From: Mizuhopecten yessoensis
Lineage: Eukaryota
Assembly (NCBI RefSeq): GCF_002113885.1
Contig: NW_018404269.1
Coordinates: 6,108 to 70,107 of the forward strand
Direction: 5' to 3'
Length of the DNA: 64,000 nt
In this document: positions 10,625-34,059 of the stretch, in pieces
Layout of the letters: each line of letters opens with the position of its first letter
How positions within the stretch are numbered: the first letter of the stretch is position 1
Made by a program: the position numbers and the translations under genes
The notes under the pieces: model-generated
The model's database searches: none
What the model was told of the DNA's origin: nothing
Seen by the model: the letters and a program-made list of their open reading frames with translations, nothing else

Positions 10625-13600
10625 TTACCCTTTTCTTTTCCGTGATCCTGAAAAAAAAAACGTAAAATAAAAATAAGAAAAGAAAAACCAAATACATTAT
10701 AAAATTACATATTTTAAATATAGATATGAAATAAAAATAATGAGCCATGTCAACATAATTCTTCAAAATGTGGTGTCTCAATTATTTTTTTTTAAGAGAA
10801 AATCGAACTTATGCTTGATGTCGAAGGATTACATATGCCAATTAAAAAAACCTCTCAAGTTTTGGAATTTCATTGAAAATCGGAGAGCAAAATATGAATA
10901 TGTTTAGTACTTTGCATTCCTTTATCTACTGAAAAATATTTTTCGATTGCTTACAAATACCCCCATTGCTATTAAATTAATTACCCATATATGTTAAAAT
11001 GTAGACATACGTTCAAAAATCATTTCAGTATCAGTGTTTGGGGGTTTCCAAATGTCCGGTTCCATGTCAAAGCGCCTATCAGTTATCCTGGAGTATTCCA
11101 CTGTGATAACGTCTCCCTCGTCCATCGTGTATGGAGTTGTCTGAGGTACCAGTGTTGTGTACGTCATCAGATCAGGGTTTTCACAACGGAAATGTTTCAC
11201 GGTGAAGTTGTCGAACCTTCTGTCGATACTGTCTGACACGAATGTTATATTCCATGTTTTACGACGCTTACACTGCAAACAGTAAATAGCAATAGTTTAC
11301 TGCACGTTACATATAACAGTAGTCCACGTGTTGAAGCCTGCATACACTATATATAACAGTAGTCTACGTGTTGAAGCCTGCATACACTACAAATAACAGT
11401 AGTCTACGTGTTGAAGCCTGCATACATCTGTTATCAAAGGTTACCAACCATTACCGACAATATGGATCAGGAACGGCAACAGCAATCACAGATAGAGGTG
11501 ATAAAGTGTGACAGCAATATTTACAAACAATTATCATCAGAATGTTGTTACCAATTATGACAGGAAGATAATATAAAAGTGTGGACAACCAATACAATAA
11601 ATGTTATCCAAGTATGGCAAACAAACACTGTAGGGCACTGTACTCAAAATGTGGACGACACTGCTCATCATTGGTAGCTGAAAACAAAGTGTTGACAAAG
11701 ACAGCTGGGTCCAAAGTATGGACAACAAATAGCACAAATAAATAAGCCTGTGGAAATCAGACAAATATCCACAACTGTAGCTGAAATCATTGATTTCAAT
11801 TTCTCATGAAAATCTATATAGGCATACTGTTACCCATAGCAAAGCATCTACTCACTACCGAGTGTGTTCGTTCTTCTGCTAAATAATTCTGGACACCAAA
11901 AAAAACCTACAAATCTTAAATGCTAAGCATCTTTTTCTCCGAAATTGATGCATATGCAATTTAGTGTTTGATTTTTCTGTATGCCGAGAAAACTTCATTC
12001 AGTCAAATTTCGCCCTTCACTGGTAGAATCTATTTCGCGAAGTGTTAGACTCGCCTTTCAAATGTTATTATTATGCAAAGTATGTTAATTATGTACTTAT
12101 TTTCACTGCTGAGATAAATTCGCCATCATCATGGAGGGCGAAAAAGGCAGAAGTTAAACTGCGGCGAAACTTTCTCGGTATACAGTACTTTACTGAATAT
12201 TACTTCCGGGTCATGTTAGTTGAAACCGTCGCACTTGAATGAATCATTTTCCTACCTTGAACATCCACTTGCATGTGAAGTACTTCTCTGTGAAGTTTCC
12301 ATTGATGATCATTCGCCATACCCTCCCCTTGAAAGCTGTTTTTCGTACTTTGCATGCATCATGTTTCTCTAAAAGGACAAGTGATCATACCTTATACGTT
12401 CGTATCAGTTAAACGATTAATCCTATGGCAAATATTGCATAACTGCTTTTAAATAATTTTCCCCGCTGCACTCTAGTTTTTTTCAATCAACAGTTATCTA
12501 CCCCTTGACTCCGTTTTCAATTTACCTGTAGCACACTTGGTCCATGACACTTCGTTGTCCATATAGCGCAGTGGGTCAGATCGATAATATAACATTTGGA
12601 GGTGGAGTGTTCGAATCTTGTTCTAGCCAAAACGTTATTTTTGCTCTCAGAACGCTATTGTTTATTATATATGTTTTATTTATTTCATCGCTATAGTTTT
12701 TTCATGAAATTTCCTCAAAGTATACTTTCCTTTTCAGAAATTATCTATCTAAACTATAGTCATGCCAAAAAATAAAAATATGTTAAGGGTTATTGCATTG
12801 GTACGGGTATCTTAAAATTGAATAACGTAATGATGAAAATATAATTGACGTAAACAAGTACCTTTTCAAATAGTATGGTTAAGATATACTTCGGCAGTCT
12901 TATGGGGAGAGTCACCTGATTGACTGTTAATGTAAATGTATGCAAGTAGCATGTAGTTTCGGGTAAAATAATAAAATTATTAAAGATCATATTATTCGTC
13001 TCACCTTCTTTCAAACAGTGTTTAGGTTTCCCAGGCTTTTTTATTGAACGATACGTGCAGAAGTTATGGGAATTGTTCGATGGCACGAAGAGTTTCGATT
13101 TCTTTCTGTCACACATTTTACGGAAAGGACAGAAGTATTGGTGATCTGAAAAATAGAAAAAGGAGAAGAACCAGAGAAAAATACAATGACTCACTGTAAT
13201 ATATATATAATATAATAGGGGCTCTCGAACGTACTTCAAAATGTATTTGTTAATAATTCACTGCTAGAGATAAAATATATCGTCTTGATCGCTTGAATTA
13301 AGTGATACAGTAGAACCTTGATAGAAAGCTATTTGTTTCTCTTGCCACTTTGCTCTTAGCCAACATAACAAAATGTACTTTTGCTCTTTTTCTTAAATTT
13401 ATCCTCAAATCTTTTATAGTGGAAAATACATTCTGGACGAATGGTTGCAGTATTACGAGGTCTGCTTTCGTAATTTGATAATTAAGCTTAACATACAGCA
13501 TCTTTCTAATTTTAGCGCATTTGATTTGTTTATAAGATTGCCGTGTTCAGTTTCTTGCAATGATCTTATGATTCCTCCATTGTGGATGGGTTGAATCAAC

Positions 13601-16600
13601 ATTCCATGACGCTGTACAGTTGGTCGTCAATCAAGCGCGATGAACGCGCCTTAAATGCGATAATAATACCTGTGGGAAATTACAATTAGCATACCAGAAG
13701 GTATATCAAATAAATTAAGGTTGCTTGCACAGGTTTTTTTTTCTTTATTAATAATAAGTTTTCCTCGATAATTTTTCTAAAGAGCGGCTAATGGTTTTGC
13801 AGTGTTTAAGCATCAAATAAGCATATTCTTTTAAAATAAACCAAAATATATATTAGCCTGAAAGGAGTCTTCTTTTACCCCAAATAAATCAAACTGTCCT
13901 TCAAATAATTTACTCTGTACATGCTACAACTTATTTGAGCTGTCTATGATAGTATTACGTAGACGGTACATTCCATCCGATCACATCTCTCGACCTTTTG
14001 TCATTTGTTACCGAAACAAAACAGTAATTATCCGAACATTTATCGCATACAATTTGCAGTTAATGTCAAATGCATTTGATTATATAGCAATACGTACTGT
14101 GAACGCACGTAGCATGCATCCCTTGCTTGGTTTTGATGACATCTTCTAAGTCAGACAGCGATGAATAAGTTTCACCAACCTTGAGGACTGTAAAACCAAA
14201 GTTTTGTAAAGTATATATATTACGATTTGTCGAAAGAAGTGTGGTTACATCAGAGATACTATTATTAAATATTGAACAATAAACTGCCTGATATGAGCAT
14301 AACTGATGTTTTGGTGACGGATCGAATGATACATTGTATATGGATTAAGTAAATGTTATTTAATCTTTTTAGAGCAATTTTGACACTAAAACGTGTTTGG
14401 TGTAAAATGTGTATTAAGCAAGATCGTATATTTCAAGCGACACATATCTCAGCTTTATGAATCGTTACATGACCTGGGATATTTCAAAAAATATGTTTCT
14501 TCTACACGTCTATGAAACAAATTTGAGTCCTTATTTTGTTTCTGTATGCTGACAATTCCATACACGAAGTCTATGATAATGAAATGGCTATCTCTTGCTG
14601 TAGACGTCAAAGAACATGTCGTTGTACTGGTCACAGGTAACAGGAATGTCGTTTTACTAGTCACAGGTAACAGGAAAGTTGTTTCACTAGTCATAAATAG
14701 GGAGAATGTCGTTTTCCTACTAGTCATAGGAAGGAGAAAAGTCACTTTGCTAGTCACAGGTAGTAGGAATGTCATTTTACTAGTCAAAGGTATGAGAAAT
14801 GTCGTTTTACTAGTCAGAGGTAAGAGGAATGTCGTTTTACTAGTAACAGGTAGGAGAAATGTCGTTTTACTAGTCACAAATAGGAAGAATGTTGTTTTAC
14901 TAGTCACAAATAGGAATAATGTCGTTTTGCTAGTCACAGGTAGTAGGAATGTCATTTTACTAGTCAAAGGTAGGAGGAACGACGTTTTACTAGTCACAAA
15001 TAGGAAGAATGTCGTTTTACTAGTCAGAGGTAGGAGGAGTGTCGTTTTACTAGTCACAAATAGGAAGAATGTCGTTTTACTAGTCATTGGTAGGAGGAAC
15101 GCAGTTTTTCTTGTCACATGTATGAGAAATGTCGTTTTACTAGTCACAGGTAGGGGTAAAGTTGTTTCACAAATCACAAATAGAAAAATTTCATTTTTGC
15201 CAGTCACAGGTAGGGGGAAAGTCGTTTTCCCAGTCACTGGTATGAGAAATGTTTTACTAGTGATAAGTAGGGGAATATTAATGAAATTAAATTGCTTGTC
15301 TTGCGACCCTACAATGTTGAAACAATGAACCGTGAATTTCAGCAAATGACAAAAAAAAAGTGTTTTACTTTAGGTCACCCCGTCGTATTAGGAAAAACAC
15401 TATCAAGATCTTAAACAAATTTTCTTACAGTCAATCCATTAAAAGGTTAAATATTAGTTAAACAGAATGAATTTTCACCAGATGGTTGTTTATGCTGAGT
15501 TGTAATTGATTCCTAATGACCTGCATATCAACGTCACGATAGGGTATTTTAATTATTTGAAAGACATTTAGCACATCGGCCATTCATTACTTCGGTAAAA
15601 CGGGCTTGCGCATCGCATGAGTACCGTTGATTATATGTTAAAAGACTGATAACATATTTTATAGTTTAGTCGCATTCCCCTTATCTTCATCATACAGAAT
15701 AAAGATTCTACATTCGTAGGTGGGTTTTTTTACCCTCAACAGGAGTAAAATTAATTGGGTAATGGACAATTTAAGTAAAAAATAAATAAAGTAAACTTAC
15801 ATTTGTAGTAAAGCACGAAACCAGAACCACCTTTTATGCTATTATCTGTAAACTTAAATCCAAACGTTATGTTGACGGGTCCAGTTGTGAAATTATGAAT
15901 ATAAGTCATAGATTGCTCTAGTTCTACGTCTTGAATGAATGCAGTGTTAAAATCATCACCGATATCCAATGACGCAACGTAGATAGCAACGCGGCTGAAA
16001 TCTCTCCGGGTCTGCAGATACCCGTTAAATGTCACGGTGCACCTTGGTGCATAACGGTTATTCTCGATATGAAAGACGTCCTTGCCGTATTCCCATGGAA
16101 ACCGTTCGTGACTCCTCACTACGCCAGACGGTTGGTTATGGCGTTGTTCTATGTTGATTGAATGCGTCTTGTTTCCAGCGCATATATCTGAAACAACTAT
16201 AAAAGACAAAAAAATATATTTTCTTTCTGTCTTAACCTTCAATTCCTCTGAAACAAAAGTTAATGTAGAATACACCGTTTCTTGTGCAATTTCTAATTTT
16301 AAAAGATAATTTGACAAACACAATGAATAAAATATGTTGCTGCTAATACAATGTATCAATCAGAGGAATATATGTGATGATTAGAAATGCAATATACCTG
16401 CTTTCTGAACACATTTCCAGTCCTTCACCATGACGTTCTGCCATTCCGACGACGGACATTTCGTTCTTAAACTAGTAGAAGGAAACGTTCTATGAATGGA
16501 TGATAGATCAATAAGACATTTGCTTTTCCAGTAGCAATTCAAGATGTCGACGCGTAAATCTGTGTATGGTATATCCACCCCGTAGCAGACGTGCCCAGCT

Positions 16601-16748
16601 TTACAAGACACACTGGTAGGGTACACATCAGGTTTGTATATCACATATCCAGGGGGACAGGACAGTTCAAGAAATTCACAGAAATCTTTAGTACTCTTTC
16701 CAGCACAACACTGTTTTAGTTTTTTTGTAGAAACTCTTTTTGCTGAAC
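10625..16748 (-). CDS. Gene B: SUEL/Gal-lectin-like + CUB-like domain protein with basic tail (5' exon unresolved; ~425 aa recovered)
   Basis: Phase-consistent GT-AG exons: 16748-16398 (LSCPPGYVIYKPDV...CYWKSKC), 16187-15801 (SGVVRSHERFPWEY...GSGFVLYY), 13145-13005, 12368-12256, 11272-11011 and 10647-10625 (RSRKRKG*). Minus-strand AATAAA is near 10215-10225. Confidence 0.75.
11310..11425. repeat. ~40-bp tandem repeat, 3 copies
   Basis: ataacagtagtcyacgtgttgaagcctgcatacact repeated three times. Confidence 0.9.
11976..12187. mobile_element. MITE with CTGTAT...ATACAG(TA) inverted termini (family also at ~63221-63394, partial at ~53830-53881)
   Basis: ctgtatgccgagaaaac ... tttctcggtatacagta here, and ctgtataccgggaga ... 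ttcccggtatacaata at 63.2-63.4 kb. The copies share ggcgaa/ttcgcc subterminal motifs. Confidence 0.6.
14605..15265. repeat. 30-bp tandem minisatellite (~21 copies) in an intron of gene B
   Basis: Unit gtcgttttactagtcacaggtaggaggaat. It explains the repetitive ORFs 14455-15345 and 14546-15328. Confidence 0.95.
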
Positions 16749-18087
16749 CTGAAAACATGATCAATACATATGATATAACTTTGCGGCGAATTTATTACAT
16801 ACACATGAAAAACTGTTAATATGATAAAAATGTTGTAGATGTTCGATGAACATTTCCCCCAAAGAGTAAATAAACATAATGTAATAGTTTTGTTTTCCAG
16901 AAAATCAAACATGACGTTTCCTTCTCTTACATGCACGATAGACTCAAGAGATGATAACATATATGCAAATGAGCATTTTTAAAACTATTACAGGAACTGT
17001 TGTCTATCTCCCTCCAATGCAATTACTAAAAGATAGAGTCTCACACCTTATGATACCTTCCGAGAGTTATCGCCTTTGGACCCGCTTAACATTATTTCAT
17101 ACTTACCAATAATTGTCAATTATAGAGTCGACCAATGGTTTTTGATATATACAGAAGTGGTGTCTCCATCAAAGCTGACAAATGCTATTGGATGCTTACA
17201 TAATATTGTCCCTCAAATCTCGAAAATGAGCCGCGGCATTTTTTCGTTTTTAGTACGAAATCCCAAGCTAGTTTTCAAAACCGGACTATCTTCATGGACG
17301 ACTCATTTAGACTGTAAGGTATGGAAGTTATTTTTAAGACAGTCTTATATTTGAAGCATTTTAAACAATACACGACGTAGTTGCATCATTGGTTAAGATT
17401 ATTACAAGCATTTACCGTAAAAGAATCGTGCAAGTTGCCCAGTGTTTTAAACCTGAAATAAAGTATTGATTTAGGGGGAGGGGTGCACTAATAACCATAA
17501 AGCCATACACGTGTCAGTTTGTTATTTCACCATTGGCAGCAAACTGACTGCAAGAATCCAATGTTTATTTTCAAGGCCGGCCTATTTTCGAAACTGGCTT
17601 ATGTTCCAGATATATTTGACTGCCAGGAATTTCAGGCTTATTTTAAAAGCCGGCGTTTTTCAAATTAGGCCTATCATCAAGAACTTATGATGAGAAGGTT
17701 ATGATAAAACATAGTGTTGTCGTTATCAAAGCTAACGAATGGAACATACTACTTACATGTAAGAATTCCTAACAATATTTTTCTCAATCAAAGGCGTTCA
17801 AATGTATATCATGCCTACCGAAAGTTGCCTTATCAGACCTGACCAACGCTTCATGTTATGAACAAAGAGGTGACCCTATCATAGGTGTCAGATATCGCAC
17901 GCTACATACAGTGAGTGTTATGTTCGTGTCAAAGAAGACACTACAACAGAGAAAATTCTCTCTGGTAAAGCTGACCAATACTGGAAAAATGCTTAATGTA
18001 ATTTACAACTATAAGAGTTGAACAACACTGCAATATGTTTGCAGAAAGGCTGCCTATATTTGACCTGAACCGTATTACGCAAAACGA

Positions 18088-18265
18088 ACAGAGCGTGTGT
18101 CTGTCAAAGCCGACAAACTCTGCATAATACTTACAGAGCGTGTGTCTATCAAAGCCGACCAACTCAACATAATACTTACTGAGTGTGTGTCTATAAAAGC
18201 CGACCGACTCTACATAATACTTATAGAGTGTGTGTCTATCAAAGCCGACCAACTCTACATAATAC
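18088..18265. repeat. 45-bp tandem repeat, ~4 copies
   Basis: acagagcgtgtgtctatcaaagccgaccaactctacataatactt repeated, with a further degenerate copy near 18420-18460. Confidence 0.85.
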
Positions 18266-19910
18266 ATGTACGTATAACTTACAAAACGTTATTGCAAAGA
18301 TGACTAACAATATCAGATTGCGTCTCATTGAACAAATTCTACCAACATAACTTTGCACTTTCGAAGAAGTGTTTCAATGTATCAAATCTGACTTATTGAT
18401 AATTACGATGATATATTTCCATCAAAGCTGACAAATACTACGCGATACTTACAGAGTGGTGTCTCAATCAACGCTATCAGGAATATGTAGCCGAATAGCG
18501 GACGCATAGCCGGTGATTTTCACATGTATCCTGGCATTCAAAATAGGATCAATAATCTATTTTACAATGATGATATTTTCTGGAGATACTGAAACCTTCC
18601 GTAACGATATGCTGTTTACTCCAACGTGAGTTTACGTAACGCCAACACAGGCTATACGTACAATTCTTGATATTTATAGTCAATGGACATAATAGAATGT
18701 GGCAAAAAATGCAAGGTTAGTCGAATTTACATATCACTGACGAGGATATCTACACCAGCAGAAGTGTATAGCGTCTAATCCTATATCGTGCGAACAGAGT
18801 TTGCAACTCTGCTTCATTTATTTAAAATCCCGTCATTGTATATTCTCATATTATTTTCTCACTTCTGTTCACAACAGGAAAAAAACGTTTGATTTTAGTT
18901 TTCAGACAAATTTGTTTTTTTGTAATTGAACAGTGTTTATCGGGAATCGAACCGTCATCCCAAAATGTCTTTTTTTCTATTTTAGAATTTGTAGAATTTT
19001 CAAAACAGGAATCTGTTAAGTTCATACCATGTCTAACGCGTTTTGTAATAGTTCTGGTGGTTTCTTTTAGGTTTCATATATGAATTATTTATTGTACACT
19101 GTACATGCTTTTTGCGTTTCATTTCCATTTTTATTCTTGGAATTGTGCATTCTATCTAGATTGATTGTAACATCTAGCTGCGGTTTTAGTTTTTAAGATC
19201 TTAGTAAAATGTAACCGCTGAATATTTGAAAACGATTTCAATGCCTGAAAAGGCTAGACTCTTAGTTAGTTTGGCCCGATAATGATTGGAAGTACGACTT
19301 ATATAAAAGCATAAAACTCATTCACTATTTCGCTAGCAAGTTGAAATTCTATAAGATGATGGTGATGCTATACGAATTATATCAAGTAATATGAACATTA
19401 TATTGTTATACTATGTGTAGACAGAATAAGCGTACATGTGTTACTGTTGTTGTTTTGGGATAGTTCTCATTGATGTTGTTGTTATTGTATACATCGGTGC
19501 ATTCGAGTCTGTCTGTCTGCTCCTCTGGGACATGTTTTAAGGTGCATCAGGACACTTTGAGATCGCCATATACGGTCGAAAAAGAAAGTCAAGAATTTAG
19601 AACAAAAGCACCGTTTCACAAGCGATCAAATATATGAACTTTTGAAAGTAGAACTTAATAAAAGTATTGGTGTGTTCATGTTCTAAATATCCTACTTTAT
19701 TATAGCGGAATCCGGTATTTTGAGGTACAATTTTACATATCGTAGTAGCTGTGACGCACAAAATTTATACCCGTAAACTGATGAAAATTCAGTTGGGTAA
19801 TATACCTCTGAATGCGCTGTTATATGTAAGGTTTGTCGTGCCATGGCGGGACTTTAATATAATTATGCAGCGCGTACATTAGATGGCATGTTTTCAATCC
19901 AACTCCTTAC

Positions 19911-19958
19911 CACATTTGCCGCCATCACCCATATTATGTATAACATGAATGTGTTCAT
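19911..19958 (-). CDS. Candidate signal-peptide exon of gene B (MNTFMLYIIWVMAANV)
   Basis: Hydrophobic N-terminus with a GTG|GTAAGG donor, an acceptor at 19974 and an upstream TATAAG (~20125) with a donor at 20077. It ends in phase 0 while exon 16748 needs phase 1, so a micro-exon would have to be missing. Confidence 0.3.
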
Positions 19959-22900
19959 AACACTACCGTATATCTGTACACATTTCGGCAGAAATGCACA
20001 CTATACAAAAAGGAAACATATCTGCCACTTATCCAAACCGATCAATGTCAGGATATATATAACAACCACATAATTACCTTTCACAGCACTTTACTTTCGT
20101 TTTAGCAGCCATCTTTGAACTACTTATATTCCTACGCCATCGACTGTTTCCGAAAATAAAACCAAAACTACCACCTGTACGATTATTCTAAATAATACTT
20201 TTTTAACTGATTTTGCTGCAAAAACATACTTTCCAAGTTTCGTGAAAAAAATAATAATAACGGGGTTATTTGGCGAATCAATATCCGGTTTAGTGTTGCA
20301 GGTCACATGCTGACAGCCAAGATGAACATCAGTTCCTTGCAAATACGATCGACATTGTCGATTACTCTGTTTTATAGACAATAGGTATGTATATGTGTTA
20401 TGAGTTATTGTGCATTATTGGGTTTTTACAATGAAAATCGGATTTTTGGTATTGAAAGAGAAAATTTTCCACGTCTGTGTTGTCAGTCGGTCAGCCATGT
20501 TTATAAAATGAGGTATATTTTCTGCTATAAAATTACATGTTATGTTGTATGTTGTTGTTTTTTTTATGCAGTTTGTTAGTAAATAAATTACTTTATTATG
20601 TTACCAAATCATTCTATTGTTAATTTTGCGCTCATAACGGTATTTTGTACGGAAGCCTGCAGATAGTCTCACCGGTCTCATGCATGCACTCCATGAGCAA
20701 TGGCTCATTTATTGTGAGTTTAGCTCGTTTCCAGTTTTTAATGTGGAAATGGGGATATTTGTTACCATGTGGCATATAATTGCAAATATATAAATTAATC
20801 CATCCTGTAGTTTAAATATTACGACATGTCTATAGAAACATGGTATAAAAAAAGGTGTATACTATTGTAAGATTGTACCTAAACAATTGCAAACAACATG
20901 TCATATGGTGTTTTGGTATGTGACAAGTACTTTATTATAGACAGCAAAAACTTATTTCTATCTTCTGTGTTTTCAATTATTGGATTCCAGATGTAGGCGA
21001 AAGTTTACCCGATTTGTAGGCAGGCAAATTTCCCATTTCTGGATCATTGATATTGAAATAAGGTATTTTAGAGACATTGCTTTATTTACTTCCCTTAACG
21101 GAAATAAAAGACATACTCGGATACATTGAAAGTGGTAGTTTACATGAGGTGAATAGATGAACACTTTGGAATGTTGTTAAAAGAGTAATATCATATCTAA
21201 CGAATCCATTAGTTGGTGATGTACCTTGTACAAAACACCATGTCATAGAAAAAAAATGGCAAATTATTGCGAAAGTGTGTTTAAAAGTATATGCAAACAG
21301 ACTGGCATTCATGGGTACCCATACTTTTGAAAATAATCCCAAATATGGCCGACTTTGCAGAAGAAATAACATGTAACTACATGTTATGTGTTTTGTCATA
21401 TCAAGTCATATAGTCTTAAATCGGACTAAGTAAGAGTGGCAAAACATGAAGTTGTATTTAAACTTCATATTTATTGTTAAATGATGAACAGTAGTGAGAA
21501 ATTCTGGTGGAACAAATGTTTCGGTTTTGGTTCCAAGACTCTTCAATGATATGTTATGTGAACATTTACCCTTAAAACTAATATGCAGTGATGAAACACC
21601 ATATCCTGACCTTCATTTTGATATATAATAATTTACATTTTTTTTCCCTCTCTTTTTCCTTTTTTTTTTTTTTAAATAAGGGAGCAAAAAGTGTCTTGAT
21701 GTACCTGAAACAAACTTCAAGGTTTGCGGTCAGCTTGGCGATTGGTTTCAGATGAAAAAACAGAACTGACCAATCACTAGGCTGATACCTAGCATAGGAG
21801 CGACTACCGATTTCAAAGCCAGTCATTTTTACCGTTACTCTTTCGTGCAACTCTTTAGATGTACATCAAACTAAAATCTCCACCAGTGGCAGAGACAGCC
21901 TTTGATTCCGTCATGAAATATTCTAGGTTTGCAGAGAACTTAAGAGATCAGAACCCCTGGAATATCGAGGATGCAAAAAGTTATCATAAGGGACAATAAT
22001 GCGATAGTATCTTTAAAACACGCGTTTGCAATCTGCAGTTTGTCACATATCAAATTCATGTTCAGTTATATGTTTGAGGTAAGATCAAGTGGTATTGTTT
22101 CTTACAACTGAACCATTGCTAAACACTGACCATATGTTATAAACGAGTTATATATTTCTAGCAGTACTAGTAACATCTATGAATGTATCAACGATGTAAA
22201 ACGTATTTAAGTGACACGTTTAACTTTGCTTCCTAAAACAGAACATACATTATTACGGCATCAAACCGATTGATAAATCAAAAATAAAACCAAATGTTGA
22301 TATCGTTAAATGACGTGAAAGTAATATCACGTGATTATTACACAAAATTTACCGCAAAATTGACAGTTTTTCTTTAAAATGTGTTGAGCCACACCATTAA
22401 TAGAATATTATAATGGTTTCCTGTTGACAACCACATACATTTTACTCGCATTGCAGCACAATAAAATAACAGCTATACTCGTTCAGTATATATGGTATTC
22501 GCATGATACATCGTCCACATCAGCTGCTTTGAATATCCAGTGGGCCTAGTGTTTCCTGTATAAACAATATATTATGTTACCAGACAAAACAAAACAAAAA
22601 AGAGTACTGAAAGACATTTTTTTTTTTTATTTGATACAATATTCGATTATTCATTTGCATGTGTTTTGAATAAATTAATAAATTAACACAAATTAGAAGA
22701 ATCATCCAAATAGTCGTGCATTATTTCCTTTCGATAATTCTCAGTTGTATGCACAAATGCAAAACTACACCTACACACCATATTTGAAAATACATATATA
22801 AATGTGTATGGTTCCTATTTTAAATCATAAATCACTACAGTGTAAGTTTCAAATACTTAAAGTTTACAAATAATGCCGCTCCGATATAAACACATGTGGA

Positions 22901-24384: not shown

Positions 24385-24590
24385 TTGTTCTGTTTTGTTT
24401 GTCTCGTCTTATAAATATTTAAGGAGGTGCCAGGTATTGAGGTCGAGAAAAGCCGGAGTTTTCGGAGAAATCCACCGATCTGCGGCCAGTAGTTGGCGAC
24501 TGCCCCACGTAGGCCTCGAACCCGCGACCCAGTGGTGGAGGGCTATAGTAATGAGGACCGTCGGACGCCTTAAACATTCTGCCACCGCGT
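24385..24590 (-). mobile_element. tRNA-derived SINE (V-SINE-like core)
   Basis: The minus strand has an A-box-like head, a B-box GGTTTCGAGGCC-like motif, a TTTCTCCGAAAACTCCGGCTTT core and an (AAAC)n-type tail. It is closely related to the copy at 47220-47416. Confidence 0.7.
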
Positions 24591-24994
24591 TGTACGGTTG
24601 TGACATACTTATAAATGTAGTATTTTTCTTGCAATGTCCGTATCGATTGTGTATGACTATTTATGGAATTATAAATATATGTATTATTGTTGTTGACAAA
24701 AGAGTTCAAGTTGTGGCTCTACAAAAATATTCGAGATGCAGTCCCGTTTATGTTGGCAATGCTTATGCAATAAAGTGTTTAGTGTTTCTGTGTGTGTGTC
24801 ACCGATTCCGTACACGAAAAACCAAACTTTTCTACAGCGAAGTCATTTTCATTCTACAGTACATATATTGAAGCAATAAAATGCTTATGGAAATAGAAAT
24901 TGTCCTTTCCAGGGTGAATTACTATCAATGCCAACTGGAAGCAGTCCTGAATTTAATACATATACTTCACGTTCTCTCATAGTCACCGTCATCA

Positions 24995-27900
24995 TCACGG
25001 TAATGTCTTTGCTGTACCGGTCCCTCTCGAACGTCGCTTGTTTCTTTCGCCACTCCTAACCTTTTTTCTATTTTTAGACGTTCCTGAAAAAAAAGAATTA
25101 TAAAGTGGCATGCACAATCGACGTTTTCGTATAAAAGGTATTCGATATTTGTAATGTTTTAATTTTATTATAAAAAACAAGGTTTTGGGGTTATTTCATA
25201 TTGTAGTGATGTTCGACTTGATATAAACTGCATTGTAAATATTTCTATTGATTTCCAGCAATTGCAACGAATACAAATCTACTTCAAACACATATACAAT
25301 ATAAAAAGTATACTTAAAATAAAATGATAGATTCATCAAAATAATACTATAATTTGGGTCAATAAAAGTGCCATGCTTGGACAAAAGAAGCAAAAAGATA
25401 AATTTAACATGTGACTAACGACTTACGTTCATAATGGAGTATAAATCCCGACCCTGCCTTGGATCGACGTTTTGTCGAGAAGGTAATCTCTACGGTACCT
25501 CCTGACAAAGTTTTCGACATGTTCCCATCATTGCCTCTGAATAAAATGGTCGTTTTTCGCCCTTTCCTGATATGTCTTAGGAAGAAGGTGTCCCTTTCAT
25601 CGTCTATGTCGACGTCGTCCAGTTGGAGGGTCAGCTGTCGGCCACGTCCTATCTGTTGACAAGATTGACATGCTAATTAAGTATTTTTCAGTGTTATATA
25701 AAGTTCTCCATGAACGTGCTTTAGTTTGCAATTAGAGTTTAGATCCTTTATGTCAGTCGTTATAATCTCTATATCCTTTCATATTGATAAGCTGCAGCAA
25801 TTCGTCGTGTGAATGGAAGGTCAATCCTGTTATGGGAGATGATGCTTGCATCATTTTATTGTTAAAGGTAACGCTCAAAGCTTCAAATCATTTTTTTGCA
25901 TTGATTTTGGTTATATTTACTAATATTTGCGATTTGTTTTGCGAAAATGTCCTTAACAATGCAATAAACCACTGTCTTCATTTCCATTTAATCTTTTAAA
26001 GTTTTTTTGGGGGAGTATAGATAACACATGGGACACACTGTACGTACAATTTTAAATGTGCAAATGTAGTCTTTGGTCTTAAGTTGGTTCATAGATATCT
26101 AAATCTAGTGACAGCGTTCATTCTCCTTTCAGAAAGCGATTACAAAACATAAGCCCTTTAGCGCGCTACAAACTCGCAATACATCGGAGTACCCAGCACT
26201 GACTGTTTTTCTGAACCAGACGCTATTCGCCGACGTTATCTAGACTGATACCTAACCTACATGTCTTACAACATCCTTCAACTCTCTCCGTAACACAACA
26301 TGTGCCAAGGCTTTGCCAGCCTCGGAAGCCAAACACACAGAAATAGAGCAGCCGAACAGTGCACACGTTATGTCGAAATCATGTATAGTTTTGGGCCGTG
26401 TCCTGACGGTGCATGGGTATACGGTATATTAATGCTGAATTGAGTTTGCTGCAAAAACATGCGAAAATCGAACGTTTGTTTTATAATAATGACGTGGAGG
26501 TTCTATATATGCGGCACTGTAAAGTGAATTTAAAGAGATTTAATAGGAAATGTAATAGACGCAGGCACTGGGTGCCTCTCTATCCATACATTGTATCAAT
26601 ACAATGTACATATGAGATTGTAACCAGCCAAATGACAGTATTTAAGTACTCATATGTCAGTCGTACTCCTAAATGTACTGAAAGAACATCTGCATCATTG
26701 ATATTTCATATTAATCAAAAGGATTTCAATTCGCCATACTAATCATATTTAGACGTAATTCGTGCCAGAATCGAAGCTAAGGATATTACATGTACGATGA
26801 TTTGCTATATTTACCCTAATCCGCTGTCGGCATCTTTTGTTCACTCTGGGGTAGTGCCAGGGATATTTGCCGTGGCTGCGGACAATACCGGTCGGCAATT
26901 TTGCTACTCTGGTGTCACAAATGTTAATAATGTTGCCTGGGAAAAAAACCAAATAATATTTGTGTAATACACGTTCTAACGAGAAATATATGAACTCACA
27001 TAAATAACGGAGTCATGTCCGGGTAATCATGAATGGTTACCTTGCCATGGTGTGTCTTCTATCAAACCCAGAACTCATAATTTTGTCCCGAGACATGATG
27101 TAATACCCTAATTTGAAATTACATTTATTTCAATTTCAATGTTTTCAAAATTAACGTTAATATGTATGCAACGTTTAATGAGAGTTTCCGGTATCGGTGT
27201 CTCTTATATCTTGTAGGTGAAGTTCAAGTTGATGTGGAATCATCTTAGTTTGCTTATCAGCTGGTTCCTTGTACGTAGGGTTCTGATATTACCTTTTAAA
27301 CAAGCAACCCGTGATGACCGAAATATTGTAAGTGTCGATTCATATATTTGAGATAACGTTTATTAATTAATTACAGCGAAGAAAAACATTTTTTGGCAAA
27401 CTAATAATACACACCATAAACGTTTTATAAATAATCTGATAGGTCGGCAGCGCTGTTTTAACTGATTTTGTCTTTATTTAAGATATTTCTCACCTTCCTT
27501 TTCACATTTGAAGCCTCTGCTTTTAAAGATGTCAGCAACACGGCCAAAACAGCGAGCTGATGACGTCATTGTAAGGAATGCTGGTCCTCGCCATTCCATT
27601 GTACAATTTCTACGCCAGTAGCACTCGTTACGCTGCACGAGAAGGTGCGGAGAAAGTCCCTCACATCCGGTATATCTACTGCTGGTGACGGTTACATCCG
27701 GGGCGTATATAACTTTGCCTCGAGGACAGGACATCGAAATGGATTGCTTGTCATTCCATGTCATGCTAGTCTTCAACGTTGCTGAAACCAGATTCAATAA
27801 AATTTGGACTAAAAACCAATAGTGGATGTCGATGGTTTGATCTGTTTGCTAATCAGACATAAACAAGACGCACGTGATCACTATTTCTTCGAGTGTGCAA

Positions 27901-30900
27901 AAAATATTAAACAGATAAAGACTACATCAACGAACTCATAAATTTCGAAAAATTCGCTTGCATTACACTTACTCATGCAAATATATCAAAATCACATTAA
28001 GTATACTGCATGTTTGTATACATTTCCTAAATAATTTATAAAATGTTCATACTGAACACATGAAGGTTTTGGATTAAACAGTTACATAATCTTTCCTTAA
28101 TTGTATCTCATCAAGATAGATTCTTATTATTATAATCATTATGATTGTACTATTATCATAACGACGATAAGACATGTGATTACTACACATATCACATGAT
28201 ACTCAATATTTGATGCATTTTTACAAGAGTTACTCCCCCTACATCATTGTATTGCATATCATAACACATTCACACACAAATGATGATCCAGATTACGTAT
28301 TACACTGTACAAAATATATTGCATATTTCCCTCCGCTATCAGCAGAAAAACGCCTATGCCGTTGAAACGTGTCAATTATTTCGAAGAATTTTTCAGAATT
28401 TACGTCTAATCAATAACATTAGTTAAAATGAAAATACATATAACATATATCTGCCAAGCGGTATATATATTGAAACAAAAAACAAAAACCCAACAAATCT
28501 AAGTCACGAAAATATTTTGCAATAGACTGAATATAGCTCCTGGACTATTGATAATAACAAAAATAAGAGTCTGTGACATTTAATCCAGCGGGAAATTAAA
28601 CCGCTGTAGGTAGATTACGTATCGGGACTATCACGACGTGGGGGTGGGGGTGGGGGCGGGGGTGGGGGTGTTTACTTCATATGCTTCTCACCACAGGAAC
28701 TAAATAAAATACAAATACTAGCAGGCCTAATGTCACTTGACAAAGGCATGTTTACTTTTGAACTTTTGTTTGTGAGTTATAACAACACAACTGTTGAACC
28801 TACTGGCATCAGCTACTTGATTATTACTAACATTTCATAGGAAGACGAACACGTAAAACCGAAAATACGATGTCAATTCTGCAAATCTAAGACGAAATAT
28901 CTAAAAGGGTATACCAACAACTATGAGGATCAGTGACAATCACAAAACCTGATCTATTTTTACTGCGAATGCCTCCCTTTAAAATAGCCGGAAATTGTAC
29001 TAGTAATCGAAACAGGTGTCAGGTACAAATGTACTAGTAATCGAAACAGGTGTCAGGTATTTCTGATCGTTTACTTCCGTAATCTAGTTCAATTATATCC
29101 TTGTTTCTCTTTCCGGTATCATTAGCTATTCGGGCTGATTCATTTACTAAACATCTGGCAATAATACTAGTGCAGACCGGCAAATCTAGCTTGGCGTGCT
29201 CGCTTAAAAAAGTGGAATAAACGTGATCGAACTTTCGCTAAATAAAATGTTTTATCCATATGTTTACTTCCCTTTACAATCTTCCTCAGTAACACTCCTT
29301 ACTTGAACAAGCCCTGAATACACCAAAGACCAGGACATCTTTTATTTTATTTATTTTTTGGAATATTCATAACGTTAACTACTGTCATGGTAAGAGTCTT
29401 TGACATAAAACGTCTATTCTAAATAAATAATAGGTAAGGTCATTTCATTACAGATGAGGAAAAAATACAAACAACAATTTGTGGAAGCATTTTTAAGAAT
29501 TTTGAAATAGTATTTAAGCAATTAAAATAATTATCAATAATATTATCTTCACTTAATTGAAATGACCCATATACTTCTATTTCATAGAAATTTTGTATTG
29601 TAAATATTCTTATAGTCAATTGAATCATTAGCTAGACTATTTTCACTGTCCTTCAACATTTGAATTATTGAGCAGTAATGGGACTTTTGAATTACTGGGG
29701 TAAAATCACCCTCATATCATGCAAACCTTGTTGCTAATCGTGCATATAAAAGATTGATTGAAATGAGGAAAATGACGTCACTAATTTGTTGCCGCGACTT
29801 TATAATGTGCGTGACCCTATAGAGTAGAAATAGTGAGAAAGATAACTGTGTACAATTAAATCAAGGATTTTTAAAAAGGCATATAAAATACCATTATTGT
29901 ACTAATTTTCGGACAATTTTTACAAAACACAGAAGGCCAGACTGATGCGTGAGAGGAAACCCAAAAACTCACTTATAAATCTGTTGTAAGCGGATTTATG
30001 TATCGGGCATTTGTCTTTGTAATTTGAGTGGTCACGTGATAAATTAATAAAGTAAATATGCTTACAGTATACATAATTTAATAATTCGTATCAACAGAAT
30101 CTACCTCCCACGACAACAATTCAAAACGTATAGTTTACGCGAAAATTACAGTAACAACAGACAATAATTATCAAGTAACGCGGAGAACACCTTGTCATGA
30201 ATGTCAACGTTTTATTTTCACCGCCAGTAACTGTATTTTGTTTCAAAATAATAACCAAATAAAGAACGCACAATACAAGAAAGGGGACAATAGGTCATTT
30301 GAAAAAGCTATTTTCACAGCATTGTAACCTAGCTATCAGGAAAACAGATAAGATCAGCATTGGGAAGATCAAGAACTTTTATATAATCATAAGTCCGAAA
30401 TTCTATAGACATTGGTATTGTTGTAACAATTGATTTATTTAATGTATTGTTATTATTGTATATTTGAGTCCGGTGTAGAGTATGCTGTACTGGTAATAAA
30501 CTTAACTTAACATGTATTTATTTTTAGATAAAGTTGTTACTGTTTACAATATACTTATTTAGCTCCTTTGTATTATGTATAACACACCTGGACATTGGTG
30601 CAACTGAACCTATCGCTTACGTTCAAATTGTGATACTCCTAATATGAACGTATGACTAAATTATAAACACATAATGAAACCACCAATATACATATTCCGA
30701 AAAATATGTAATAACCTTAAATATATTTCGATATAAATTTTGTATGTCACCACCCAGCATCACTTACCCTCGTCTGCTGGATAACCGAACTACTCGGTAG
30801 TGAAGCGGACGTAAAACCAATCAACCAATCAATCGATCACTTACCTTGTACGAGATAATGCGTTGGAGTCTGCGACGGTTGGTCACTCGCTAAGCGAAGG

Positions 30901-31560
30901 TTTCCTTGCGTCGATTTTCCAATAACTTTCACTGAAAAAAATGTAAACAATTATTTTCGAAGCTTTGTATTTTGGCTACTTTAGAAATATAATTTCATTT
31001 CTCTTAGATACAAAATCAAAGGAACAGTCATCCAAAGGTGTATTAACGTTTACTTAGAATGCACAAGTAAATTATCTACATACTGACAGACATGACCCTT
31101 CGGTGTCTCATTTGGAAGTATTCATAGCTGAATTAATATGTGCATCATTCCTGCCAAATATGATGCAGTGCACGGGAACGTATTCCAATATCGTGTAATT
31201 CTAATGGTTTCTACATGACCCACTCTTGATTCAATGTTAATTGCCAAAAAGGAAAACTAAGTTGTCAAAGTTATAATATCCATATTAGATCGAAATTTTA
31301 AAGGAATTCCGCGTATGTACATGAAATACAAAAGATTAAAGTAACGTTGTCATGTTACACAGTGCAATAAAGCATGATTCAGTTTCACGTTCCATAACAA
31401 AAATATTCGACAAGGGGGACATATTGTCTTTGTTTGCGAGTTGTGGATGAGGTAGGACACCATACTTGTACATAAGTCCAGCACTACGTAAAGAAGTTGA
31501 TAGACAAGCTCAAAAAAGCCTAACCAATGTTAATGTTGTAATAATAATGCGAAAACAGGC

Positions 31561-31601
<41 letters not shown>

Positions 31602-34059
31602 TTTCTATATAAGACTTAATACAAAAAAAGTTATAGAGATTAATAATTCAGTAAAAAAATAATAAGTTACTGAGGGTTTTGTTAAACAGGATACATTGCA
31701 CATTTCCCCCTCAAAGAAACAAAGACTTACCATTATAGTATACAACACAGCCTTCACGTGTTGTGTCAGTGTTTTGTGGGCGCCATTTTATCTCAAATTT
31801 GGAACCCTTTTCGGAAAAAGTAGCGAGTTTTTTAAATGTTTTCTTTCTTAATTCCCCGCTCTCTGAGGTCCAGACTACTCTAGGTCGATTTTTAAGTCCA
31901 ATTTGAATGTCCAAAAAGTTGAGTGATAACCTAATGACGTCACTCGTACTCCCAAAACGTCTAATGCATGGTGTGTTAATGGTTCGTCCAGGGTTGTTGT
32001 AGCTACTGATAATACCACTGTCGGGGTTAATGGGTAGGGCTTCGTTTCCCGAACACATGTCGTGTATGGTACCTACAATATATTAGCAAACATAGAATTA
32101 CAAAGCAAATTATATATATACGAACACTCATCACAACCAGTATGTTAAATAGCGTATAACAAATTAATGGCGAAGTCACTAGTACTGTGTTCAATTATGT
32201 GAACGAGCAATACAAAATGGGGTGGTCGGGTGTTCAGTGGATAGCGCACTTGCCTTTCACCAAGGCGACCGGGGTTCGATTCCCCGTTCAGACGTGAAAA
32301 GGTATGGGGTTACCTGCCCGACCACATGGGTTTTGTCCGGGAACTCCGGTTGCCCCCGCATGCTAACATCCGGCCCAAATACAAGTGATTAATATAAGTT
32401 GAAATAACTTGTTTCATAGTAGAATTAAAAAAAATAACGTTTATAAAAAAATAACTTTTGCAAAACATTAAAAACTATATTTATATTGAAGATTTGAATG
32501 TTAAATGCATACATAATGAGTGTACTTAGATATAATTCTGATTTTATCAGGTAAAAATTAGAATTAAACCTACCTTTATCGACACATTTTGGGGGAATGA
32601 CAGACACATATGTCAACGGTTTCCCCTTGCATATTTTTCTCTGTCCCGGTAAGGGAACAAGTGTCTCCAGAATTCTTCGTAAATTTATAGAACAAGTCTC
32701 TTGGTTTGCGCATGCTTGAGTCTCCCTTTCCAGTGATTTACTCATTCCCAGACAATCATTTCCATTAAAAACGCACTTGCTGCTGTCTGAGTACCCAGCT
32801 ATGAGTTTAGGTGCCAGCATCACTTTGTGGCTGGGACAGGTGATATTCATGAAGTCGGCATGTCGTGTGACGCAGCGCGTCAGGAATTGTCCTGACCGGA
32901 GATCCGACACTATGTGAGAGAGAAAAAAGTTCTATAAACATGTAATAATCGAATTGATATCATAATCAATATTTCGTTCTAATTAAAAATCAAAGGGACA
33001 ATCGAGTGTTTGTCACAAATATGCAACCGTTTTTGCACAAACCAAATGTTCACTGTGGAATGCGTCCAAGGTCACTTCACGTGTCCTCCCATATCTCCAC
33101 GAGTGACAACATGCAGTCCTGTTTACAAACTAGTTTAAACAGTCTATAATTATGTGTAACCCCAGTGCTGCTTTAATTAAGATCCTTTAAACAAAAGTGA
33201 TGTTTGTAAACAAATTTTAGTGATTATCTGAAAACACTGAATTCCATTGTAGTACGTTTTAGTGACAAATATGATTGGATCTGTTAATTTACAAAGGTAG
33301 TTATATTTTTTCACATAGAGAAGTATAGCAATAAATACTATGCATTGGGAAAATTTCATTCAGTCAAACAACTGTATTCACTCTCGCTATATACTTACTA
33401 CATACTTATGTTGTGTGCTAAAATTCAGCCTTCATCAATTAATCCTCATCACCAATGGCGAAAAATTCTAAACTTACACTGCAGCGAACATTTTTCGGTA
33501 TTCATGTACAGTATTAAAATACGAATGAAAGCAATGACGTGATATTATCATTTCGTCTGCATACGTAATATGGAATGTATTATGTCAATGTGGTGTAGAT
33601 ACGTAACATGTAATGTATTATTCCCCCCGATAGTTTAGATAGACTTACCCAACTCTAGTTATAGAACCACGTGATCACGCTTAATTACGTTCGTTTACCT
33701 CTATAAACGTGCGAGTTTTCGTGTTTGTGTTCTGGATGTTGTATATGTGTTCAAGATTGTCTTGGTTCAGTAGCTCCAACGGTTCATTCATGGTGTCATT
33801 TACCACTTGAATCCTACTATACAGTGCAGATAGCCCCTTACTCAAAAACGGAACCATACCCCACCGTCTGAGGGTCATACTGTAACCTATGACTTATTGG
33901 TCATTTGGCCGAACACTAATAACTTCGCCATGCAGTCGCTGTATGTATTTTGGAGAACTATATGCATACATGTTTTAGTATTTTCTCACCTGTGACATTG
34001 ATTGCGCTGGTGATCCCGCTGAATACAAGGACGCTCGCGATCACTACCAAATTATCCAT
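24995..34059 (-). CDS. Gene A: secreted tandem (SUEL/Gal-lectin-like + CUB-like)x2 protein with basic C-terminal tail, 519 aa, 8 coding exons
   Basis: Exons 34059-33990 (signal peptide MDNLVVIASVLVFSGITSA), 32909-32574, 32072-31731, 30931-30845, 27781-27494, 26936-26815, 25652-25427 and 25083-24995. All are GT-AG with matching phases and total 1560 nt. CUB-like motifs: SGIISSYNNPG, TGIVRSHGKYPWHY, GSGFILHY. Lectin-like Cys patterns: ITCPSHKVM...C...C, MSCPRGKVIY...CYW. Confidence 0.85.
28640..28668 (+). other. Potential G-quadruplex (five G5 tracts) in an intron of gene A
   Basis: gggggtgggggtgggggcgggggtggggg. Confidence 0.6.
30759..30845 (+). mobile_element. 67-bp 5'-truncated SINE/LINE 3' tail with a 10-bp TSD (ATCACTTACC) that duplicates a splice donor
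   Basis: ATCACTTACC at 30759-30768 and 30836-30845 flanks an insert ending gacgtaaaaccaatcaaccaatcaatcg. Confidence 0.75.
31563..31601. repeat. (CAT)n microsatellite
   Basis: ~13 CAT units. Confidence 0.95.
32219..32440 (+). mobile_element. tRNA-derived SINE (V-SINE-like) in an intron of gene A
   Basis: A box (tgttcagtgg), B box GGTTCGATTCC, core GGGTTTTGTCCGGGAACTCCGGTTG and an A-rich end. Confidence 0.75.

What the first reader, a model, noticed from the sequence alone, without database searches (positions are those of the whole stretch)
10625..34059. Tandem pair of secreted (SUEL-like + CUB-like) module proteins with basic tails, invisible in the ORF track
Seen: gene A rebuilds as a complete 519-aa protein (signal peptide, lectin-like, CUB-like, linker, lectin-like, CUB-like, K/R tail), with domains bounded by phase-1 introns. 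Gene B, 8 kb downstream on the same strand, has the same plan. They share distinctive motifs: CPxGxVIYxPDV, CYW, G(I/V)VRSHxx(Y/F)PWxY and GSGF(I/V)LxY. Established: SUEL domains bind galactose/rhamnose and CUB domains mediate extracellular protein binding. Inference: a lineage-expanded family of soluble, cationic lectin-CUB proteins with no protease or TM domain, perhaps acting in extracellular matrix, adhesive or pattern-recognition roles. I do not recognise a named gene.
Basis: partly seen in the sequence, partly recalled or inferred. Interest (0 to 1): 0.7.

Follow-up and report, generated by a model that had tools for sequence, protein, structure and literature searches.

The report
Scallop secreted SUEL-like/CUB gene pair
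The stretch holds two real neighbouring Yesso-scallop genes, already in public annotation as "uncharacterized proteins", that encode secreted, strongly basic proteins built from very divergent CUB-fold and SUEL-lectin-like modules; the sugar-binding motifs of true SUEL lectins are missing and the function is untested.

Summary
One GT-AG exon set per gene reproduces each database protein exactly. Both have 8 coding exons and the same intron phases (1,1,1,1,1,0,1).

Gene A is signal peptide, S1, C1, linker, S2, C2, K/R tail. Gene B shares the exon plan, but its fifth exon is a 47-aa Cys-rich basic piece, not a detectable lectin-like domain. Its second beta-sandwich is not recognisably CUB by sequence.

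Pfam and PDB sequence searches find nothing. An AlphaFold model built on a family alignment gives a CUB fold for the C domain. The S domain is only suggestively SUEL-like and lacks the YGR and DPC..KYL motifs.

No membrane segment was found, and the calculated pI is 9-10. The tandem pair is conserved in Pecten, Argopecten and Ylistrum. Distant relatives occur in Mytilus, and three more loci lie in this genome.

The only transcript evidence is intron-free contigs of the Argopecten orthologue. The scan noted a related membrane-bound SUEL-CUB family before, on other DNA of this genome. Interest is modest.

The parts
33990..34059 (-). Gene A (LOC110441794) exon 1: ATG and signal peptide (aa 1-23), ends in phase 1
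   Evidence: Exact threading of P0020 and a unique GT-AG solution
32574..32909 (-). Gene A exon 2: S1, SUEL-like Cys-rich domain (phase 1-1)
   Evidence: It is the best conserved part among orthologues, 67-73% identity
31731..32072 (-). Gene A exon 3: C1, divergent CUB-like domain (phase 1-1)
   Evidence: hhalign of the C1 family against canonical scallop CUB gives P 4e-4, and against the C family P 3e-5
30845..30931 (-). Gene A exon 4: 29-aa linker (phase 1-1)
27494..27781 (-). Gene A exon 5: S2, SUEL-like domain with CPRGKVIYAPDV and CYW
26815..26936 (-). Gene A exon 6: first part of C2 (GIVRSHGKYPWHY), ends in phase 0
25427..25652 (-). Gene A exon 7: second part of C2 (ends GSGFILHY)
24995..25083 (-). 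Gene A exon 8: K/R-rich 28-aa tail and stop codon
18453..18507 (-). Gene B (LOC110441744) exon 1: ATG and signal peptide (aa 1-19)
   Evidence: Exact threading of P0007 and a unique GT-AG solution
16398..16748 (-). Gene B exon 2: S, SUEL-like domain with an 8-Cys frame
15801..16196 (-). Gene B exon 3: C, CUB-fold domain
14616..15252 (.). 30-bp minisatellite (about 21 copies) inside gene B intron 3. It is open in two reading frames but is not part of the annotated protein.
   Evidence: It is absent from P0007
14098..14187 (-). Gene B exon 4: 30-aa spacer
13005..13145 (-). Gene B exon 5: 47-aa Cys-rich basic segment. It sits at the position of gene A's S2 exon but is not detectably S-like.
12256..12368 (-). 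Gene B exon 6: first part of C', ends in phase 0 six residues after a Cys, as in gene A's C2
11011..11272 (-). Gene B exon 7: second part of C' (beta-sandwich, low model confidence)
10625..10647 (-). Gene B exon 8: 23-nt micro-exon encoding the basic end SRKRKG and the stop codon

Best explanation
This is a tandem pair of real, conserved bivalve genes (M. yessoensis LOC110441794 and LOC110441744). They encode secreted, disulfide-rich, strongly cationic proteins made of a two-domain module. The module is a very divergent SUEL-lectin-like domain (S) followed by a divergent CUB-fold domain (C). Gene A carries it twice. Gene B carries it once, followed by a Cys-rich basic piece and a second beta-sandwich. 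Both end in a polybasic tail.

Shown: the gene models, the absence of a hydrophobic stretch long enough for a membrane span, the positive charge, the CUB fold of C, conservation of the pair across scallop genera, and the absence of the canonical SUEL sugar-binding motifs.

Inferred mechanism: the proteins act outside the cell as binding or bridging adaptors. The CUB domains, with S as a cap that no longer binds rhamnose or galactose in the canonical way, would hold a protein or glycan partner. The K/R tail would tether the complex to polyanionic material such as sulfated mucus or matrix glycans, acidic matrix proteins or microbial surfaces. Gene A, with two modules, could cross-link two partners.

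My confidence in the gene and domain description is about 0.9, and in the mechanism about 0.35. The figure given for this explanation is a blend of the two.
For: - Gene models: one GT-AG exon set per gene translates exactly to P0020 (519 aa) and to P0007 (476 aa).
- Orthologues: gene A is 58-64% identical to proteins of Pecten maximus, Ylistrum balloti and Argopecten irradians. Gene B is 51-66% identical to its orthologues in the same three genera.
- Conserved adjacency: accession and LOC numbers of the two genes are consecutive in Mizuhopecten (OWF54630/OWF54631), Pecten (XP_033732106/107) and Argopecten (XP_069103626/627).
- Transcript evidence: two Logan contigs of 1672 and 1682 nt each carry the whole 512-aa Argopecten-type orthologue of gene A, so they are intron-free.
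- Solubility and charge: no window after the signal peptide exceeds KD 1.1; pI is 9.2-10.1; K+R outnumber D+E 87:42 in A and 74:50 in B.
- Profile comparison: the C family against canonical scallop CUB exons gives P 3e-4, against 0.33 for the SUEL control. The alignment is in register with the G-x-I-x-SP..P..Y...C signature.
- S domain: ESM Atlas neighbours are SUEL_Lectin clusters (score 0.92, 193-195 shared features). hhalign against canonical SUEL gives P 8e-4 to 2e-3, with the Cys columns aligned, against 0.11 for the CUB control.
- Basic tails elsewhere: K/R-rich open stretches also lie downstream of the paralogous S-C modules, and the Mytilus relatives have long K/R/Cys tails.
Against: - No family library or PDB sequence search recognises any domain.
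- The S domain was never folded or fold-searched on its own, and its profile match is weak (probability 13-25%).
- C' and the region around exon 5 of gene B have pLDDT below 50.
- No paper in the searched library mentions these genes.
- The tethering and bridging mechanism is pure inference from charge and domain types.
Confidence: 0.6

Rival explanations
1. They are functional carbohydrate-binding lectins of the SUEL/rhamnose-binding type. They would act as soluble pattern-recognition or agglutinating molecules through galactose or rhamnose binding by the S domains.
For: The S domain's language-model neighbours are SUEL_Lectin clusters. The profile alignment to canonical SUEL is weak but in register. 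Gene B's S domain keeps eight cysteines at spacings comparable to canonical domains. Orthologues differ by 33-42% among scallop genera, which is compatible with immune-type divergence.
Against: Pfam SUEL_Lectin gives no hit even at E 1. YGR, GDPC and KYL are invariant in eight canonical SUEL domains of this same genome. In all S domains they are replaced by unrelated residues. Gene A's S2 has lost two of the eight cysteines.
Confidence: 0.15
2. They are fast-evolving reproductive or gamete-surface proteins. SUEL was first found as an egg lectin and spermadhesins are CUB proteins. The basic tail would bind the acidic egg coat or sperm surface.
Against: There are no expression data at all. Spermadhesin is only one of many equally scored CUB neighbours. 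I did not compute a genome-wide baseline for scallop orthologue divergence.
Confidence: 0.1
3. They are shell-matrix, byssus or mucus structural components. CUB domains would organise the matrix and the cationic tails would bind acidic matrix proteins or mineral.
For: The proteins are secreted, Cys-rich and strongly basic. By general knowledge rather than any test here, CUB-domain proteins recur in skeletal proteomes.
Against: No accession of either gene or its orthologues appears in the searched literature. There are no low-complexity, repetitive or acidic regions typical of matrix proteins.
Confidence: 0.12
4. They are annotation artefacts or decaying pseudogenes, with chance open frames stitched together.
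For: No library recognises the domains. RefSeq isoform X2 of gene B starts at an internal Met and lacks the signal peptide.
Against: All 16 exons are open, with canonical GT-AG borders. Full-length collinear orthologues occur in four scallop genera. Intron-free contigs carry the whole orthologue. The cysteines and motifs are conserved out to Mytilus.
Confidence: 0.03

Closest known systems
CUB-domain extracellular proteins (Pfam PF00431): MASP/C1r/C1s CUB1-EGF-CUB2, PCPE-1, neuropilin a1/a2, TSG-6 CUB_C, Kremen, the Gpr126 CUB and spermadhesins
   Same: The C domain is a beta-sandwich of about 130 aa. Its best structural neighbours are almost all CUB domains. It has an N-terminal Cys, then a G-x-[IV]-x-S-x..P-W-x-Y motif, then a second Cys at the canonical distance. 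It is extracellular. Gene B's order of sandwich, small Cys-rich piece and sandwich was aligned by Foldseek over about 350 columns to CUB1-EGF-CUB2 proteins.
   Different: It scores below any Pfam threshold. The canonical 'SP' is replaced by 'RSH'. Only one of the two usual disulfides can form, because the C domain has two Cys. There is no protease, EGF, CCP or other partner domain. The Cys-rich piece of gene B does not fit the EGF cysteine pattern (reading the sequence). C' is unsupported as CUB by sequence (P 0.2).
SUEL / rhamnose-binding lectin domain (Pfam PF02140): sea-urchin egg lectin, fish RBLs, latrophilin RBL, and 45 or more canonical copies in this scallop genome
   Same: The size is similar, about 95 aa. 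The opening C-E-x-L-x-L-x-C-P-x-G-x-[VI]-I matches. Gene B's S domain keeps an eight-cysteine frame with comparable spacing. Language-model neighbours are SUEL clusters. The profile match is weak but in register.
   Different: YGR, GDPC and KYL are invariant in the genome's canonical copies and absent here. Pfam gives no hit. Gene A's S2 has six cysteines. The S fold was not tested on its own. These domains should not be filed as SUEL lectins.
Scallop/mollusc SUEL-CUB single-pass membrane protein family noted earlier in this scan (s1-546579, another piece of the same genome)
   Same: By that note, the head has the same order, a divergent SUEL-like domain followed by a CUB-like domain. That agent reached the same conclusion that canonical sugar binding is probably lost.
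   Different: The present proteins have none of these and end in a short polybasic tail. My profile search of this genome did not reach that family at E 0.01, so any kinship is distant and untested.
Mytilus 'uncharacterized protein' LOC143064203 / LOC134706952 (P0006, P0012; UniRef name 'CUB domain-containing protein')
   Same: It has a signal peptide, S, C and then a basic tail. It shares the CPxGxVIYxPD, CYW, GIIRSH..PW.Y and GGSGF motifs and is 26-31% identical over S and C.
   Different: It has one module only. It is followed by a tail of about 190 aa that is rich in K, R and Cys, in place of a second module.

Membership tests
CUB (PF00431) | Match to the Pfam CUB model at or above the gathering score | tested here: not met
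   No CUB hit at E up to 1 for any exon or for the whole proteins P0007, P0003, P0009 and P0006. PF00431 finds 42 other places in this genome at E 1e-10, none of them in the window.
CUB (PF00431) | CUB beta-sandwich fold of about 110-130 residues | tested here: met
CUB (PF00431) | Signature G-x-I-x-SP-x-[YF]P..Y followed by C-x-W-x-I, with the first disulfide pair | tested here: inconclusive
   hhalign of the C family against canonical scallop CUB exons aligns this signature in register at P 3e-4, probability 40%. 'SP' is replaced by 'RSH'. Both cysteines are present.
CUB (PF00431) | Second disulfide (Cys3-Cys4) of the canonical four-Cys CUB | tested here: not met
   The C domains of A and B contain only two cysteines. 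By general knowledge, some accepted CUB domains also lack one disulfide.
CUB (PF00431), applied to gene B's last domain C' | Sequence or fold similarity to CUB | tested here: inconclusive
SUEL / rhamnose-binding lectin (PF02140) | Match to the Pfam SUEL_Lectin model at or above the gathering score | tested here: not met
   No hit at E up to 1. PF02140 finds 45 places in this genome at E 1e-5, none of them in the window.
SUEL / rhamnose-binding lectin (PF02140) | Hallmark motifs YGR and (G)DPC..KYL | tested here: not met
   These motifs are invariant in eight canonical SUEL domains of this genome. They are absent from all S domains of A, B and the paralogues.
SUEL / rhamnose-binding lectin (PF02140) | Eight-cysteine frame | tested here: inconclusive
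   Gene B's S domain has eight Cys from FCE to WKC, at spacings comparable to canonical copies. Four Cys columns align in hhalign. Gene A's S2 keeps six.
SUEL / rhamnose-binding lectin (PF02140) | RBL alpha/beta fold | not tested
   The S region of the whole-protein model has pLDDT about 60-85, with mixed strands and two helices.
SUEL / rhamnose-binding lectin (PF02140) | Binding of rhamnose or galactose | not testable with these tools
   This needs recombinant protein and glycan arrays.

The most novel reading that the evidence does not exclude
The S-C module with a polybasic tail defines a family restricted to pteriomorph bivalves. Its members would be secreted recognition proteins in which a former sugar-binding SUEL domain has been turned into a protein-binding cap for a CUB domain. 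The K/R tail, which holds furin-type dibasic sites and in gene B sits on its own micro-exon, would be a functional unit. It would either anchor the protein on polyanionic microbial or matrix surfaces, or be released as a cationic peptide.
Probability: 0.15. Interest if true: 0.55.

Novelty: new variant of a known kind. Interest (0 to 1): 0.3.

Why it matters
If the reading holds, these genes add a small, conserved bivalve family. In it, two well-known extracellular modules (SUEL-like and CUB) are fused, diverged beyond the reach of family libraries, and joined to a polybasic tail. This is a candidate for mucus, matrix or immune recognition in commercially important scallops and mussels.

It is also a practical example of how many 'uncharacterized' mollusc proteins contain known folds that only structure prediction reveals. 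It does not open a long-standing question, and the genes are already in RefSeq.

Tried and rejected
- Pfam scans of ten exon translations and four whole family proteins found nothing relevant.
- PDB sequence searches with three profiles found nothing.
- The word search with the C exon was blank because of its length window.
- Single-sequence AlphaFold of the C exon gave pLDDT 45 and was unusable.
- I looked for a second SUEL-like exon in gene B by tblastn and three-frame reading around 12500-12900. The suggestive fragments there are intronic: they are not in P0007.
- The 30-bp repeat at 14616-15252 was considered as a mucin-like coding stalk and rejected, because it is absent from the annotated protein.
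- Gene B's exon-4-plus-exon-5 segment (aa 269-344) was tested as a degenerate S domain: no similarity (P 0.27).
- A membrane-anchored reading was rejected. No hydrophobic stretch occurs in A, B or their orthologues, and none was seen downstream of two paralogous modules.
- Five literature searches found no paper that mentions these genes or this architecture: three by accession or LOC number, or for SUEL with CUB in bivalves, and two broader ones that returned only unrelated papers. One candidate paper was read and was unrelated.
- No exon model that I joined myself was sent to any search or fold tool. Whole-protein steps used the database proteins P0020 and P0007. A local script only checked that GT-AG-bounded exons translate to those proteins.


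Full report
**What is in the sequence**

The window is AT-rich (GC about 0.35). In the stated span, the only long stop-free stretches with protein-like content lie on the minus strand. Using the clearest ones as queries showed two related sets of exons, at 25.4-27.8 kb and 15.8-16.8 kb, plus a more distant set at 31.7-32.9 kb. Candidate splice sites gave a coherent chain of mostly phase-1 exons.

**Identity of the genes**

The full HMMER search with gene B's C exon (window:15802-16185:-) found six proteins in 1.84 billion.
- One is 100% identical: M. yessoensis LOC110441744, isoform X2 of 352 aa. Its cluster also holds isoform X1 of 476 aa, P0007 (XP_021340662.1, OWF54630.1).
- A profile search that included gene A's exons as separate rows returned P0020. 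This is LOC110441794, 519 aa (XP_021340727.1, OWF54631.1), on the same 1.9-Mb contig.

Both proteins thread exactly on the window. For each, exactly one set of GT-AG-bounded exons translates to the database protein.
- Gene A runs from 34059 to 24995 and gene B from 18507 to 10625.
- Each gene has eight coding exons and the same phase series: 1,1,1,1,1,0,1.

No exon model that I joined myself was sent to any search or fold tool. Whole-protein steps used these database proteins.

**Anatomy**

Gene A consists of:
- a signal peptide (23 aa);
- S1 (exon 2);
- C1 (exon 3);
- a 29-aa linker (exon 4);
- S2 (exon 5);
- C2, split by a phase-0 intron (exons 6-7);
- a 28-aa K/R tail (exon 8).

Gene B consists of:
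- a signal peptide;
- S (exon 2);
- C (exon 3);
- a 30-aa spacer (exon 4);
- a 47-aa Cys-rich basic piece (exon 5);
- a second beta-sandwich C', split by a phase-0 intron at the same place relative to its Cys as in A's C2 (exons 6-7);
- a 23-nt micro-exon encoding SRKRKG and the stop codon (exon 8).

They link A's second module to B's first.

The claim that gene B repeats 'lectin, CUB, linker, lectin, CUB' holds only for the exon plan.
- The exon-4-plus-exon-5 segment, which includes exon 5, shows no similarity to S (hhalign P 0.27).
- C' shows none to canonical CUB (P 0.2) and only a weak one to the C family (P 0.017).
- The 30-bp minisatellite at 14616-15252, open in two frames, is intronic.

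**Secreted and cationic**

After the N-terminal hydrophobic stretch, no 19-residue window exceeds Kyte-Doolittle 1.1 in A, B or any orthologue except the Pecten gene A orthologue P0021 (1.66 at residue 140, still below a membrane-span value). The calculated pI is 10.1 for A and 9.2 for B.

**Domain identity**

Sequence libraries fail.
- Pfam found nothing for any exon or for whole family proteins.
- PDB sequence profiles found nothing.

For the C domain, several lines agree on CUB.
- ESM Atlas neighbours are CUB clusters (score 0.93, 22 of 30 hits).
- The AlphaFold model of P0007 on a 21-row family alignment has pLDDT 70-86 over residues 136-270.
- Foldseek's best PDB matches are CUB1-EGF-CUB2 proteins, PCPE-1 and neuropilins (E 7e-7 to 1e-4, probability about 1).
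- I took canonical CUB and SUEL exons from this same genome and compared profiles, with cross-controls:
  - C family against CUB: P 3e-4 (control against SUEL 0.33);
  - C1 family against CUB: P 4e-4 (control 0.37);
  - C1 family against C family: P 3e-5.
- The C-to-CUB alignment is in register with the CUB signature.

For the S domain the evidence is thinner.
- ESM Atlas neighbours are SUEL_Lectin clusters (score 0.92, 193-195 shared features).
- hhalign against canonical SUEL gives P 8e-4 to 2e-3, with the opening L-x-C-P-x-G-x-V-I and four Cys columns aligned. The control against CUB is 0.11.
- Gene B's S keeps eight cysteines at canonical-like spacing.
- Against this, YGR, GDPC and KYL are invariant in the genome's canonical copies and absent from every S domain.

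I therefore call S 'SUEL-like, canonical sugar site not conserved' and do not file it as a SUEL lectin.

**Relatives and conservation**

- Gene A orthologues: Pecten maximus LOC117321704 (64%), Ylistrum balloti LOC132563464 (59%) and Argopecten irradians XP_069103626.1 (58%).
- Gene B orthologues: P. maximus LOC117321705 (66%), Y. balloti LOC132563483 (58%) and A. irradians XP_069103627/8 (51% for P0002, XP_069103628.1; 55% for P0009, XP_069103627.1, in the alignment).
- Consecutive accession numbers in three genera indicate that the tandem arrangement is conserved. This is an inference from numbering, not from coordinates.
- Two Logan contigs of 1672 and 1682 nt carry the whole 512-aa Argopecten-type orthologue of gene A. 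They must therefore be spliced transcripts. This is the only transcript evidence I could obtain.
- By domain, S1 is the best conserved part (67-73%). Tails and linkers are the least conserved.
- Mytilus species have a one-module relative with a long K/R/Cys tail.
- In this genome a profile search found three more S-C loci, at C942:1.167 Mb and twice on C5343. K/R-rich open stretches and no hydrophobic span lie downstream of the two examined.

The family is therefore small. It is shared by scallops and mussels, and it is characterised by S-C plus a basic tail.

**Mechanism**

Nothing functional is known. No paper in the searched library cites these genes.

From the anatomy, I commit to a secreted binding or bridging adaptor. 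The CUB domains, capped by S, would hold a partner, and the polybasic tail would tether the complex to polyanionic surfaces. Gene A would be bivalent. I put this at about 0.35. The rivals are a true lectin, a reproductive protein, a matrix component and an artefact. They are listed separately with their tests.

- RNA-seq support for the junctions in M. yessoensis itself was therefore not checked.

**Earlier notes of this scan**

The scan had already noted a membrane-bound SUEL-CUB family and divergent CUB-like heads elsewhere in this genome. These notes told me the species and suggested the loss of the sugar site. I checked that loss independently for these S domains.

**Verdict**

- The genes are already annotated but uncharacterised.
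- This is a divergent variant of known extracellular modules, of modest interest.

Noticed in passing
window 14616-15252: A 30-bp minisatellite of about 21 copies (75% matches) lies in intron 3 of gene B. It gives 260-304-aa open frames on both strands that mimic a coding repeat, but it is not in the annotated protein.
   Followed up: partly
window 18088-18265, 11308-11426 and 31562-31601: There are other intronic tandem repeats. A 45-bp x4 repeat lies just 3' of gene B's exon 1. A 40-bp x3 repeat lies just upstream of gene B's exon 7. A (TCA)13 microsatellite in gene A's intron 3 reads as poly-Asp on the minus strand.
   Followed up: no
window 10625-34059 (both genes): The two genes have the same number of coding exons (8) and the same intron-phase series (1,1,1,1,1,0,1). 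By sequence, however, B's first module resembles A's second module. The order of duplication events is unresolved.
   Followed up: partly
window 16398-16748 (RefSeq isoform X2, P0001): The annotated isoform X2 of LOC110441744 starts at an internal Met near the end of the S exon. It lacks the signal peptide and the S domain. It may be a prediction artefact or an alternative start.
   Followed up: no
G000:C942:1161467-1169499; G000:C5343:153878-156689 and 118081-119241 (L011-L016, L042, L043): Three further S-C module loci occur in this genome. The C942 copy has its signal peptide and S domain in one exon. Open frames very rich in K/R lie downstream of the C942 copy and the 155.7-156.7-kb C5343 copy. 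The C5343 copy at 118-119 kb has lost conserved cysteines and may be decaying.
   Followed up: partly
window 24395-24710 and 32220-32392: Open frames on both strands contain GLEPAT / GIEPRSPW-type peptides, as tRNA-derived SINE-like repeats often give. ARAGORN finds no tRNA gene in 9000-36000.
   Followed up: no
window 10625-10647: Gene B ends in a dedicated 23-nt micro-exon encoding a basic end (SRKRKG). Orthologues end in RTRKRKREA, RTRKRN and RSRQGNG. It is a conserved separate tail exon whose role is unknown.
   Followed up: no
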